Position numbers and translations under genes: made by a program. From contig NC_135658.1 of assembly GCF_964188315.1 (NCBI RefSeq), positions 124,001 to 188,000 on the forward strand: a DNA stretch of 64,000 nucleotides, read 5' to 3'. The notes under the pieces are model-generated. The model was not told the origin of the DNA and made no database searches. It saw nothing but the letters and a program-made list of their open reading frames with translations. The number at the start of each line of letters is the position of its first letter. The stretch's first letter is position 1. Of this stretch, positions 56,653 to 59,600 are shown one piece after another. Origin of the DNA: Podarcis muralis. Lineage: Eukaryota.

Positions 56653-59600
56653 TCACTTCTCCTGCATCTTCTCCAGGATGGGGACGATCATGTCAAATTT
56701 GGGGCGCTTGGCTGGGTCCTCGTTCATGCAGATCTTCATCAGCTTGCAGATGTGGGGGGAGATGCCTGGGGGGATGGTGGGCCGCAGCCCCTCCAGGGCG
56801 ACCTGGGAGGAGGAGGAGGAAGAACAACCTCAGATGGGGCCCCAAGGGTCGCCTAGTCCAACCCGGCCAGGGTGGGGGGTGGGGGTCCTGCCCTGCTGCC
56901 CCTTCCTCACCTTCATGCCAATCTCCATGTTGGAGAGGTCAGCAAAGGGCACTTCCCGCGTCACCAGCTCCCACAGCAGAACGGCGAAGCTCCACATGTC
57001 AGCCGAGCGGCGGTTGATCTCCTCTGCCTTCTTCTGCAGAGCTGCGGGAGCAAAGAGGGGCTGCAGACACGCAGGGGCTGGAAGGGGGACCCCTCCCCAG
57101 CAGGGCAGCTGCTCTGCCTGCACTCGGCTCCCCGGGCAAGCCCAGGGGGGCTTAGGGGTCAGCCCCGACTGCTGCTGGCCAGAGGAGGGCAGTGTGGCAA
57201 AGTGGTCGGAGGCACTCGCAGGAACGCCCCCCCCCCCGGGAGTGCTTTTCAGTTTGAGGTATTCTTCTGCATTGAGCAATAAAATATAATGAAACTAAGG
57301 ATAAGAGCCAGAAAAGATGACAAGTTCGGGGGGGGGGAGGGAGATCTGTGGAACAGCTCTTAGTGCAGTGACTGCTCTGCCCCCGCAGTCGCAGGAGGGG
57401 AGACTGGCTCTGGCGCTTGAATCCTGCTGGTGGGCTCCCCTGAGGGGCATCTGGTCGGCCAGGGGGCGCACCCCCCTTGGCCCGATCCAGCAGGCTCGTC
57501 TTCGGATCTCAGCGGAGGCCAGGGCGCCACTCACCTTCCGGCGCCACCCAGGCTGGCGCATACATCCTGCCAGGGCACTGGAAGGAGAACTTGACGTCTG
57601 CCATGCTGATCCGGGCCGTCATGTCTTCATCGATCTGTGGGGGGAGGGAGGACACAACGGGGAGCTCAGCCTCCTAGAGCAGTGTTTCCCAACCTTTTTT
57701 GGGCAAAGGCACACTTGTTTGATGAAAAAAATCTTGAGGCACACCACCATTACAGCCCCGTGACGTCAACGCTGCCGCCGCCGCTCCCGGCAGGCATGGG
57801 CCCAGCTGAAGCGGCGGCGGCTGTTGTGGTGGTGGCGGCGATAGCGGGCGGAGGAGGGGGCGGCGGCGGGGCCGAGGTGGCCGGCGGCGGCAGGGGAGGC
57901 GGCGGCAGGTGGAGCAGGAGGGCGGCCGAGGCCGGTGAGGGAGTAGGGTTGCCCGGGGCTTGAGGAGCCGTCGCCGGGAGTTGCTGCTGCTGCTGTTGCT
58001 GCTGCTGCCCGGACATGCCGGCCTCCTCCTCGTCCGCTGTCTCGCGCTACTCCCTTTTGCGCGCGCTGCCCTGCCGCCGCCCCATTGGCCGGGTCCTGTC
58101 AGCTGATCCTGTGTTATTTCCTGTGTGTGTGTGTGAGGGGAGAATGGAGAGAGAAACCTCGGCACCACCACCGCGGAGCCGCCCCCGGCTCGACGCGGAT
58201 CCTCACCGCCGCCGCCCCGCCTCTCGCCGCCCGACTCGCCCGCCTCCCTCCCACGGCACACCAGGCAACGTCTCGCGGCACACTAGTGTGCCGCGGAACA
58301 CCGGTTGGGAAACACTGTCCTCGAGACCCCACCCGCCCACTGAACCCCAGAAAGGGCCCCCACGCACCATGATGCTGCGGCTGTTGAGATAGTGGCGCGG
58401 GATGAGGGGCTCCAGGGTGTGTAGGAAGGCCATTCCCCGGGCCACGTCCAGAGCAAACTTCACGGCCTGCGTCTGGTCCACCACAAAGTCTGCAGGGGGA
58501 GAGAGAGCAGGGGGTGGGCAAATATGGGGGGGGAGCCTGCCTCTGCTGGGGTCAGCGCTTGCTCCTGAGCGCTGTCTGGAAGGGTGGGGAGGGCTTCCAA
58601 GGGCTGCCTGTGATTCAGGCTGCCCAAGCCAGGGGCCACAGTGCAAGAATGGCATGAGGCTCTTGGGCAGGGGCCACTCTGGCCCCCCAACCCTTTCTGG
58701 CTCTGGCCATCTACGCACTTTAGGCCTGGAAAGAGGTAAAGGCAGCCAGAAAGCGCTCTGTTCCCTCCCGAGAGCTAGAGAGAGAGCAAAGGATTCCGGC
58801 GTTGCCCGGGGGGGGGGGCTAGATCCCTGGGATCCCTTTCCACACCCCCTGGGGTGCCCCTTGGAAGCAGGGCGAGGTATGGGAAGCAAGACTCACTGGT
58901 GCCTTCGTGGAGCACGTTGTAGAGGGAGCCGTAGGGCATCCAGTGGGTGAGGGTGATGGGGTGCGGAGCAGGAGGGGACTGGCAGGCGCCCAGGACCGGC
59001 AGCACGTTGGGGTGGGAGAAGATCCTGCGAAGGGAAAGGAGGCGAGTGGAGGAAGCAGCCCACCCACCCACCGCCTGCGCTCACGTGGGCAGGCAGGCAG
59101 GGGCAGCCCCACGGGACCCCCCTCCCACCCACCTGAGCTTGGGGTACTCCTCATTGAAGTCGCGGCTCTTGCGGGTCGTCCAGTCTCGGGGCTTGAGCAC
59201 TTTGATGACGATGCCGTTTCCCTGCCAGCGCCCTTCCCAGAGCTGTGGAGAAGGCGGAAGGTCAGAGGGGAGTGGGCAAAGGAGACGGGGGGGTGAGGGG
59301 AAAGGAGCGGCCCCCACCTCTCCAGACTGGTTCTCGTTGAGCTTGTGTCCCAGGGTCAGCTGCCGGAAGTCGATGCCAGCCAGCTTGTTCAAAGTCCCAT
59401 TGCCTAAAAGAGGAGACCATCATTCAGGCGCAGCCTGCAGAAGGAACCCCCCACTGCCCAACCCACTGGGCAAGGAGAGTCCCCTCTGCCCCCCCCCCCG
59501 GCTCCCAGGTCTCCCCCTTCCTGCAGCTCTCTTACGAGGTCTCGTCCGTGTTGTGCCCTTCCAGAAGGTGTCCTTGAAGGGGATGCGCGTGAGGCTCTGG

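What the first reader, a model, noticed from the sequence alone, without database searches (positions are those of the whole stretch)
57680..58317. Candidate Pack-hAT: DNA transposon carrying a captured RANBP9-like promoter and first-exon fragment
Seen: perfect 15-bp TIRs, an 8-bp TSD (7/8), and GGCACAC subterminal repeats enclose a CpG-island-like cargo. On the minus strand the cargo reads CCAAT box (58084-58088), GC-rich leader, GCCGGC-ATG (58016), then [14 protein letters not shown]...[31 protein letters not shown], ending at a TAA in transposon sequence (57750). Removing element and TSD leaves an 87-nt intron like its neighbours. Known (recalled): RANBP9/RanBPM begins MSGQ-polyP/Q-L...[26 protein letters not shown]; Pack-MULE/Pack-TIR capture is common in plants and much less described in vertebrates. 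Inference: a hAT captured the 5' end of RANBP9 and moved it. If multicopy, it is a family spreading a housekeeping CpG promoter and polyQ/polyP module. The GC block at 58160-58260 may be a second captured piece.
Basis: partly seen in the sequence, partly recalled or inferred. Interest (0 to 1): 0.9.

Follow-up and report, generated by a model that had tools for sequence, protein, structure and literature searches.

The report
Lizard hAT transposon carrying RANBP9 start
A 638-bp cut-and-paste (hAT) transposon sitting harmlessly in an intron of the lizard ILK gene carries, in place of a transposase gene, the first ~81 codons of the host gene RANBP9, and it is one copy of a family of roughly a thousand such loaded elements, an unusually large number for gene-fragment capture in a vertebrate.

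Summary
Window 57680-58317 is a 638-bp non-autonomous hAT element with perfect 15-bp TIRs, an 8-bp TSD (7/8) and GGCACAC subterminal repeats. It lies in an ILK intron that RNA reads show is spliced normally.

The RANBP9 reading holds for the coding part. Window 58024..57772 (minus strand) aligns at nucleotide level to a genuine RANBP9 exon 1 recovered from another species. The real gene continues into the SPRY-domain lead-in; the element's ORF instead runs into transposon sequence.

The cargo is multicopy:
- Its summed contig depth is about 750-1,500 times the single-copy flank in two DNA runs.
- 15 Podarcis muralis UniProt entries are fragments of the same RANBP9 exon 1. Four fuse it to the translated TIR and then continue with different residues.
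- Four organism labels hold its 31-mers.

Not shown:
- that the 175 bp upstream of the ATG is the RANBP9 promoter;
- where the host's parental locus lies;
- any effect on ILK.

Five of this copy's eight private substitutions are CpG transitions, which argues against it being an unmethylated, active CpG-island promoter.

The scan has already flagged this family at 12 or more other places in the same genome. It is a new, highly amplified member of the known animal Pack-TIR (Pack-hAT) class.

The parts
57672..57679 (.). Left copy of the 8-bp target-site duplication (TCCTAGAG)
   Evidence: It matches the right copy at 7/8. Reads from other copies show the family's flank consensus is CTCTAGAG-like (loose ends at 58317 and 57674).
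57680..57694 (+). Left 15-bp terminal inverted repeat, CAGTGTTTCCCAACC
   Evidence: I9, 100% complementary; no other perfect match in the window.
57680..57752 (+). Left terminal hAT backbone with two GGCACAC subterminal motifs (57708, 57738), shared by the whole very abundant family
   Evidence: summed word depth is 4-7e5 against about 20 in the flank. Reads from other family members diverge into AT-rich sequence after 57752.
57753..57771 (.). Short GC-rich linker of unknown origin containing a perfect TGACGTCA palindrome (57761-57768). It is shared with longer-cargo relatives that diverge after 57772.
   Evidence: loose end at 57772 'behind', seen in 79 RNA reads and in DNA contigs of both runs. 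The diverging sequence there translates to FVRPSR.DAAR, as in the P. muralis model P0130.
57772..58024 (-). RANBP9 exon-1 fragment: 8 nt of leader plus codons 1 to about 81
   Evidence: blastn to L002 1537-1787: 200/263 identical, E 4e-49. Score 125 against shuffles at 19.3 +/- 3.4. L002's ORF P0003 matches human RANBP9 (7nsc_A) at E 1.1e-41. Contigs that continue ...AGCAGCAGC leftwards of 57771 mark where longer RANBP9 sequence goes on in other copies or the parent gene.
57750..58016 (-). 88-codon ORF: RANBP9 residues 1-81 followed by 7 codons and a TAA from transposon sequence. Probably not a functional protein.
   Evidence: Related copies carry frameshifts (P0001; P0012).
58025..58199 (-). 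GC-rich leader or upstream-like cargo present at cargo-level copy number. Its origin is unverified (possibly the RANBP9 5'UTR/promoter). It contains the CCAAT (58088..58084).
   Evidence: Depth is the same as the RANBP9 part. There is no significant similarity to the L002 upstream region. Backbone-only relatives diverge to the left of 58200.
58077..58157 (.). 81-bp segment (CCAAT, (TG)n, GA-rich) that is absent from a sub-population of copies
   Evidence: joint 58076->58158 in an X1 DNA contig (depth 2196), 37 RNA reads of X23 and an X15 contig. Its ends are not a canonical intron on either strand (sequence).
58200..58317 (+). Right terminal hAT backbone with three GGCACAC motifs (58255, 58277, 58286-). 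It includes a 23-mer (58226-58248) identical to sequence ~300 bp upstream of the RANBP9 ATG in L002, on the same strand as in L002 and so inverted relative to the cargo ORF.
   Evidence: Depth 3-7e5. Motifs. The longest exact match in 300 shuffles was 15. The minus-strand translation [14 protein letters not shown] equals the N-terminus of P. muralis model P0045.
58303..58317 (-). Right 15-bp TIR
58318..58325 (.). Right copy of the TSD (TCCTCGAG)
57635..58367 (-). ILK intron hosting the element: 733 nt, GT..AG, 87 nt without the element and one TSD copy. The element's RANBP9 part is in the same orientation as ILK.
   Evidence: joint 57634->58368 in 33 reads of X23 and an X15 mRNA contig. Searches identify the flanking exons as ILK. 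One search gives the intron ends and the 87-nt length.

Best explanation
This is one copy of a young, non-autonomous hAT (Charlie-like) transposon family of a lacertid wall lizard. The internal region is host-derived cargo rather than a transposase gene, which makes it a Pack-TIR / Pack-hAT.

Shown:
- The element has full hAT hallmarks and was inserted by transposition into an ILK intron.
- Window 58024..57772 is derived from RANBP9 exon 1 (8 nt of leader plus codons 1 to about 81).
- The cargo-bearing form exists in roughly 10^3 copies, on a backbone family of roughly 3x10^4 termini.
- Relatives in Podarcis muralis carry the rest of exon 1 up to its splice donor. In some of them the exon is fused directly to the TIR, at four or more different insertion sites.
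- ILK is spliced normally across the insertion.

Inferred:
- An ancestral element acquired the RANBP9 5' region once, by template switching during repair or replication at a hAT copy. A transposase supplied in trans by an autonomous hAT then mobilised it, recognising the TIRs and the GGCACAC subterminal repeats.
- Internal deletions produced sub-variants. This copy is a short one that lost the 3' half of exon 1, with a 2-bp GC microhomology at 57771-57772.
- This particular copy is most likely an inert, methylated intronic passenger.
For: - hAT anatomy.
- Target preference: other copies' flanks read CTCTAGAG-like, the classic hAT nTnnnnAn pattern.
- RANBP9 origin:
  - P0003/L002 is a genuine RANBP9 exon 1. 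It matches human RANBP9 at E 1.1e-41 and continues through [51 protein letters not shown].
  - The cargo aligns to it at nucleotide level with z = 31 over shuffles.
  - The ORF is collinear with it.
  - P. muralis fragments continue the cargo's last RANBP9 residues ([13 protein letters not shown]) into [17 protein letters not shown].
- Copy number: cargo depth over flank depth is about 1,500 (X1) and about 750 (X2). It is about 1,000 in the non-repetitive bins 58052-58145. For the termini it is about 3.4e4.
- Independent loci: 15 distinct P. muralis UniProt entries. Four end ...HYKG-WETL (the TIR translated) followed by different residues. Others begin with an exact translation of window 58231..58190.
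- Spread: cargo 31-mers are held by runs under four organism labels.
- The insertion is real: flank-to-TIR contigs at single-copy depth, with no base substitutions, appear in two DNA runs from different studies.
- ILK splicing: 33 junction reads.
- Silencing: 5 of 8 positions where this copy differs from the family consensus are CpG>TpG/CpA changes.
Against: - The host's own RANBP9 locus could not be searched. The direction of transfer, the exact capture breakpoints and the parent-copy identity therefore rest on an orthologue from an unidentified species and on protein fragments.
- Summed contig depth is not a true copy number, and GC-rich simple repeats can inflate it.
- No autonomous partner was seen.
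- The stretch 58025-58199 has no demonstrated source.
- A single capture followed by deletions is the parsimonious reading. Several independent captures of RANBP9 are not excluded.
Confidence: 0.85

Rival explanations
1. The loaded elements are dispersed, active CpG-island promoters. The cargo brings a working bidirectional RANBP9-type promoter to about 10^3 sites, including this ILK intron, and drives new transcripts.
For: - Stranded RNA (X23) shows an abrupt switch. Over the RANBP9 coding part (57864-58004), sense reads outnumber antisense by more than 10:1 (21-34 against 1.6-2.9). From 58005 to 58192 both strands are equal (13-33 against 14-36). This is the pattern of divergent transcription from a start near 58020-58080.
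- The cargo is CpG-rich (o/e 0.86) and has a CCAAT box. A perfect CRE (TGACGTCA, 57761-57768) lies in the linker beside it.
Against: - Reads cannot be assigned to copies, so the same pattern would arise from the genuine RANBP9 locus alone (mRNA plus upstream antisense RNA).
- This copy has accumulated CpG transitions (5 of 8 private changes), as expected for methylated, silent DNA.
- No joint links the cargo to an ILK exon.
- RANBP9 origin of the putative promoter part is unproven.
Confidence: 0.2
2. The GC-rich inside is ordinary ancestral internal sequence of this hAT family, and the RANBP9 resemblance is only compositional (polyQ, polyP, polyA).
For: - The ORF is dominated by low-complexity runs.
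- phmmer of the ORF against PDB sequences, including full-length human RANBP9, found nothing.
- phmmer against 1.8 billion representatives found only another copy-like contig.
Against: - The nucleotide alignment to genuine RANBP9 exon 1 includes non-repetitive blocks (for example 31/32 over CTTCAGCTGGGCCCATG.CTGCCGGGAGCGGC) and scores 31 sd above dinucleotide shuffles.
- Related copies extend into the unmistakable, non-repetitive RANBP9 sequence [51 protein letters not shown].
- Most family members lack the cargo: the termini are 10-30 times more abundant and diverge at 57752 and 58200.
Confidence: 0.03
3. This is a transposition-independent Pack-TIR. A pre-existing hAT copy at this ILK site was broken and repaired using RANBP9 as template (gap filling in situ), which would make it a local one-off rather than a transposed loaded element.
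For: Tan et al. 2021 (PMC8277862) conclude that most animal Pack-TIRs, nearly all of them single-copy, arise this way.
Against: - The same backbone-cargo junctions occur at about 10^3-fold depth and in several organism labels.
- Relatives sit at different flanks.
- This copy differs from a well-defined family consensus by only about 1.3%. So the loaded element existed before it landed here.
Confidence: 0.04

Closest known systems
Animal Pack-TIRs, especially Pack-hAT-N8_XT of Xenopus tropicalis (Tan et al. 2021, Nat Commun, PMC8277862)
   Same: A non-autonomous hAT whose inside is replaced by a short 5' piece of a host gene (there, 291 bp of the CAPSL 5'UTR). Copies sit at different sites with different 8-bp TSDs. 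The proposed origin is template switching followed by transposition.
   Different: That survey of 100 animal genomes found 370 Pack-TIRs (208 of them hAT). Only 4 were multicopy, and the frog example has 3 copies. Here the cargo-bearing form is at roughly 10^3 copies, with many deletion variants. The word 'lizard' does not occur in that paper's main text.
Pack-MULEs of rice and other plants
   Same: Cut-and-paste elements loaded with gene fragments and amplified to high numbers. From my own knowledge of that literature, they prefer GC-rich 5' ends of genes. The cargo here is a GC-rich first exon.
   Different: A different superfamily: Mutator, with 9-bp TSDs and long TIRs, against hAT with an 8-bp TSD and 15-bp TIRs. 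Pack-MULE families usually have many different cargoes at low copy number each, whereas here a single cargo is highly amplified.
hAT-Charlie type MITEs of vertebrates (MER1 group)
   Same: TIRs beginning CAGTG..TC.CAACC and 8-bp TSDs with a TCTAGA-like core (recalled, not tested against Repbase or Dfam). Non-autonomous, very abundant, often intronic. hAT is the main DNA-transposon group in lacertids, 2.3% of the Darevskia genome (PMC9498476).
   Different: Ordinary MITEs carry only deleted transposon sequence. This subfamily carries host coding sequence.
Ssk-FB4 of Drosophila melanogaster (same paper)
   Same: A multicopy Pack-TIR family amplified by repeated transposition.
   Different: It is a foldback element carrying a whole, possibly functional gene. 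Here only a truncated, frameshift-prone first-exon fragment is carried.

Membership tests
hAT superfamily (non-autonomous element) | 8-bp target-site duplication | tested here: met
   TCCTAGAG / TCCTCGAG, 7/8.
hAT superfamily (non-autonomous element) | Short terminal inverted repeats (about 10-25 bp) | tested here: met
   15/15 perfect, and unique in the window.
hAT superfamily (non-autonomous element) | Target consensus nTnnnnAn | tested here: inconclusive
   This copy has the A at position 7 but C, not T, at position 2. The consensus of other copies' flanks (CTCTAGAG / ATCTAGAG) fits (loose ends at 58317).
hAT superfamily (non-autonomous element) | Short subterminal repeats (transposase-binding type) at both ends | tested here: met
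   5 of the window's 12 GGCACAC sites lie in the two ends.
hAT superfamily (non-autonomous element) | An autonomous relative with the same TIRs encoding a hAT transposase (BED finger / DDE / hAT dimerisation domain) | not testable with these tools
   There is none in the 64-kb window, the host genome cannot be searched, and earlier scan notes list none.
Pack-TIR (Pack-hAT) | Internal sequence homologous to a non-transposon host gene | tested here: met
   57772-58024 aligns to RANBP9 exon 1 of L002 and is collinear with P. muralis RANBP9 fragments.
Pack-TIR (Pack-hAT) | Parental copy identified in the same genome, outside any TE | not testable with these tools
   No tool searches the host assembly. 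The UniRef-only P. muralis proteins have no DNA on record.
Pack-TIR (Pack-hAT) | For a multicopy family: the same cargo between the same TIRs at several sites with distinct flanks or TSDs | tested here: met
   - Depth ratio of about 10^3.
- Four P. muralis models fuse RANBP9 exon 1 to the TIR and then continue with different residues.
- The DNA of the other copies, with their TSDs, was not seen directly.
- Earlier scan notes report 12 or more other copies (unchecked).
RANBP9 gene proper | SPRY, LisH, CTLH and CRA domains downstream of the N-terminal low-complexity region | tested here: not met
   The ORF leaves RANBP9 after residue ~81 and stops in transposon sequence. It is a fragment, not the gene.

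The most novel reading that the evidence does not exclude
Wall lizards may harbour a vertebrate counterpart of plant Pack-MULEs. On this reading, one active hAT lineage repeatedly picks up CpG-island 5' gene ends. The earlier scan notes, which I did not check, list RANBP9 and also PPAT, CRPPA and PKD2. The lineage then amplifies them, RANBP9 to about 10^3 copies, and seeds the genome with portable bidirectional promoters and first-exon modules that can create new transcription starts and chimeric transcripts. The 23-mer from the RANBP9 upstream region lies in inverted orientation inside the roughly 10-fold more abundant backbone. That would then mean a much larger part of the family descends from the RANBP9 capture event.
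Probability: 0.25. Interest if true: 0.8.

Novelty: new member of a known kind. Interest (0 to 1): 0.55.

Why it matters
Gene-fragment capture by cut-and-paste transposons is well known in plants. In animals it has been catalogued as rare and almost always single-copy: 4 multicopy cases among 370 in 100 genomes (PMC8277862).

A hAT family that carried a housekeeping gene's first exon to about a thousand sites would be a clear exception. It would also offer a natural system for three questions:
- how TIR elements acquire host DNA;
- whether GC-rich 5' ends are preferred;
- whether mobile CpG-island pieces alter gene regulation in a vertebrate.

There is a practical consequence too. At least 15 'proteins' in the Podarcis muralis reference proteome, some named RANBP10, appear to be annotation artefacts of this family.

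For this particular copy the consequence appears nil, because ILK is spliced normally.

Tried and rejected
- phmmer of the 88-aa ORF, and of its 38-aa core, against PDB sequences found nothing relevant. The low-complexity filters hide the match, since the same PDB entry (7nsc_A) is found through P0003.
- phmmer of the ORF against 1.8 billion representatives gave only P0001, a Logan contig (L001). It shares 163 nt of cargo and then runs into an unrelated CpG island without any TIR, so it says nothing about the parent.
- An exact-sequence look-up of the ORF, and of P. muralis models P0007 and P0008, found no contig on record.
- A search with the 195-aa alternative-frame ORF that spans the whole element found nothing. 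The candidate list was saturated by low-complexity proteins.
- There is no second copy of the element or its termini in the 64-kb window.
- The leader (58025-58076), the 81-bp segment and the 58158-58199 piece have no significant similarity to the 1.5 kb upstream of RANBP9 in L002, which is from too distant a species.
- No Rfam family matches. Only sub-threshold miRNA noise appeared.
- I considered the 81-bp skip as an intron and rejected it. Its ends are non-canonical on both strands, and the joint is also seen in a DNA run.
- I considered an assembly artefact and rejected it. Junction contigs occur in independent DNA and RNA runs.
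Full report
**1. What is in the sequence**

Window 57680-58317 (638 bp) is bounded by CAGTGTTTCCCAACC and its exact reverse complement. These are the only perfect matches in the 64-kb window.

It is flanked by TCCTAGAG and TCCTCGAG, an 8-bp duplication matching at 7/8.

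GGCACAC occurs 12 times in the window, which is what shuffles predict overall. Five of the twelve sit in the terminal ~100 bp of the element: 57708, 57738, 58255, 58277 and 58286 on the minus strand.

The inside is 73% GC with CpG o/e 0.86. The flanking intron and exon sequence has 0.36-0.46.

On the minus strand there is a CCAAT at 58088..58084 and an ATG at 58016. An 88-codon ORF follows (MSGQ, nine more [25 protein letters not shown], proline runs...[19 protein letters not shown]), ending at a TAA at 57752..57750.

**2. Host context**

The exons on either side, on the minus strand, are ILK:
- 58368-58487 translates to a peptide matching human ILK chain 3kmu_A residues 106-145 (E 1.4e-18).
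- 57536-57634 matches residues 146-178 (E 1.5e-16).

RNA reads join 57634 to 58368 (33 reads in X23, plus an mRNA contig in X15). The intron is therefore 57635-58367, 733 nt with GT..AG ends. Without the element and one TSD copy it is 87 nt.

The RANBP9-like ORF has the same orientation as ILK. No joint links the element to an ILK exon, so ILK splicing looks unaffected.

Flank-to-TIR contigs at single-copy depth, with no base substitutions, occur in two DNA runs from different studies. No empty-site joint was reported. The insertion is real and is present in those animals.

**3. Is the cargo RANBP9?**

Direct protein searches with the low-complexity ORF failed.

The word-index search found P0003, a 153-aa ORF on a 2.2-kb Logan contig (L002) from an unidentified species. 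P0003 begins [32 protein letters not shown]. It runs through proline and alanine/threonine runs to [76 protein letters not shown] and then reads into an intron.

P0003 matches human RANBP9 (7nsc_A residues 62-193) at E 1.1e-41, and RANBP10 less well. L002 therefore holds a genuine RANBP9 exon 1 with 1.5 kb of 5' flank.

The element's ORF is collinear with P0003 residues 1-81.

At nucleotide level, window 58024..57780 aligns to L002 1537-1787 with 200/263 identical, E 4e-49. The alignment includes non-repetitive blocks. The local score is 125 against 19.3 +/- 3.4 (maximum 35) for 300 dinucleotide shuffles.

Homology starts 8 nt before the ATG. It ends where the real gene goes on to ...SSAPAPFPH and the element goes into transposon sequence.

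In the laid reads, some contigs match from 57771 rightwards and carry ...GCTGCTGCTGCT to the left (SSSS on the minus strand). This is the continuation seen in longer relatives or in the parent gene.

It is not met, so the RANBP9 origin stands. The caveat is that the comparator is an orthologue, not the host locus.

**4. Is it multicopy?**

Three independent lines say yes.

(a) Depth. Summed contig word depth is about 20 (X1) and about 9 (X2) in the flanks.
- Across the cargo bins it averages about 3.2e4 and about 6.7e3, ratios of about 1,500 and about 750.
- In the least repetitive bins (58052-58145) the ratio is about 1,000 in both runs.
- The termini reach 3-7e5, a ratio of about 3.4e4.
- The tool warns that this is not a copy number, so I use it only as an order of magnitude.

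(b) Annotated proteins. A search with P0003 and a cluster look-up returned 15 distinct UniProt entries, all from Podarcis muralis, that are fragments of this exon.
- Four end ...RVHYKG-WETL followed by D, LYSIYTT, T or L. WETL (with the preceding G) is the translation of the TIR GGTTGGGAAACACTG. So RANBP9 exon 1 abuts the TIR at four or more different sites.
- Three begin (S)GGE(R/K)[10 protein letters not shown]. The R form is an exact translation of window 58231..58190, in the right backbone.
- Eight begin with the cargo's N-terminal part read in another frame.

(c) Other organisms. The cargo's 31-mers are held at 0.5-0.64 share by runs under four organism labels.

The scan's earlier notes list 12 or more further copies in this genome, and follow-up agents estimated 'hundreds' to 'hundreds to thousands'. 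Those are unchecked AI notes. My depth and proteome evidence agree with them independently.

**5. Anatomy of the family, and of this copy**

Loose ends show where relatives diverge:
- Most family members leave after 57752 into AT-rich sequence, and enter at 58200-58254 on the right. A minimal MITE form joins 57702 to 58254.
- 57680-57752 and 58200-58317 are therefore backbone.
- A subgroup shares sequence up to 57772 and then continues GCAGCGTCACGCC.... Translated on the minus strand this gives FVRPSR.DAAR, the tail of P. muralis model P0130 that follows a complete RANBP9 exon 1.

Long-cargo relatives (whole exon 1 plus more) exist, and this copy looks like an internal-deletion derivative. It retains codons 1-81, with a 2-bp (GC) overlap at the junction 57771-57772.

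About a tenth of DNA copies in X1, and a larger share of RNA reads, lack 58077-58157 (81 bp, including the CCAAT). The ends are not those of an intron.

Relative to the family consensus, this copy has at least 8 private substitutions (about 1.3%): 57721, 57735, 57810, 57892, 57907, 58049, 58072 and 58205. Five of these are CpG>TpG/CpA changes.

**6. What is not shown**

The 175 bp upstream of the aligned part (58025-58199) has no significant similarity to the L002 upstream region. That species is too distant for UTR or promoter alignment, so 'captured promoter' remains an inference.

One oddity: a 23-mer in the high-copy right backbone (58226-58248) is identical to L002 1219-1241, about 300 bp upstream of that RANBP9 ATG. 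It lies on the same strand as in L002 and is therefore inverted relative to the cargo ORF. The longest match in 300 shuffles was 15. I cannot explain it. It could be a conserved promoter motif captured earlier in inverted orientation.

Stranded RNA shows sense-only coverage over the RANBP9 coding part and equal coverage of both strands from 58005 to 58192. This is what a divergent CpG-island promoter would give. However, the reads cannot be assigned to copies rather than to the real RANBP9 locus.

The CpG decay of this copy argues that this copy, at least, is methylated and silent.

**7. Mechanism**

Shown:
- a transposed, TIR/TSD-bounded non-autonomous hAT;
- host RANBP9 exon-1 cargo;
- high amplification;
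- several deletion variants;
- normal ILK splicing.

[quoted passage not shown] Mobilisation would then be in trans by an autonomous hAT transposase that recognises the TIRs and the GGCACAC repeats. No autonomous partner was found in the window or in earlier notes.

**8. Comparison and novelty**

Pack-TIRs are a described class in animals: 370 in 100 genomes, 208 of them on hAT elements. Only four were multicopy, for example three copies of a CAPSL 5'UTR fragment in a frog hAT. That paper's main text never uses the word 'lizard'.

The held literature has only three papers using the term Pack-TIR, and none of the searches I ran on Podarcis and hAT (with transposable elements, gene capture or DNA transposon) turned up this family. 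hAT is the dominant DNA-transposon group in lacertids.

This is therefore a new member of a known kind, notable for its copy number. This ILK copy is one ordinary member of a family the scan has already met repeatedly.

Noticed in passing
window 57394-57505: The neighbouring ILK intron holds another repeat: summed depth about 1,000-1,200 against about 20 in the flank. In other loci, contigs join its end (57497/57501) directly to CTAGAG plus the hAT left TIR. It may be a separate repeat that often sits next to hAT insertions.
   Followed up: no
window 58317 joined back to 57674 (RNA run X23): 16 reads join the right TIR end, through 'CT', to CTAGAG plus the left TIR. This is a head-to-tail junction separated by a CTCTAGAG-like 8-mer. 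It is either two adjacent copies in a transcribed locus or a joined-ends product.
   Followed up: no
L001:1-1751 (Logan ERR14042001): The contig starts 15 nt before the cargo ATG and shares 163 nt (codons 1 to about 50, 91% identity with a 12-nt gap). It then continues into a different CpG-island-like sequence with an ATG and a GT donor, followed by AT-rich unique DNA, with no TIR. It may be another composite or rearranged copy, or a chimeric transcript.
   Followed up: partly
window 58226-58248 and L002:1219-1241: An exact 23-mer (GCCGCCCGACTCGCCCGCCTCCC) is shared between the element's high-copy right backbone and the region ~300 bp upstream of RANBP9 in another species. It is on the same strand in both and therefore inverted relative to the cargo ORF. 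The longest match in 300 shuffles was 15.
   Followed up: partly
window 57761-57768: A perfect palindromic cAMP-response-element core, TGACGTCA, lies in the 19-bp linker between the hAT backbone and the RANBP9 part. It hints that this linker also comes from a promoter.
   Followed up: no
Podarcis muralis UniProt entries (P0007, P0008, P0010, P0012, P0024, P0045, P0123-P0131): Fifteen reference-proteome 'proteins' (two named RANBP10, the rest uncharacterised) are RANBP9 exon-1 fragments. Many are fused to translated hAT sequence (TIR = GWETL; backbone = [14 protein letters not shown]). They are most likely annotation artefacts of this transposon family.
   Followed up: partly
window 58317/58318, flanks of other copies (loose ends): Across the family, the sequence just outside the right TIR has the consensus (C/A)TCTAGAG. 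This indicates a strong palindromic target-site preference of the classic hAT-Charlie type.
   Followed up: no
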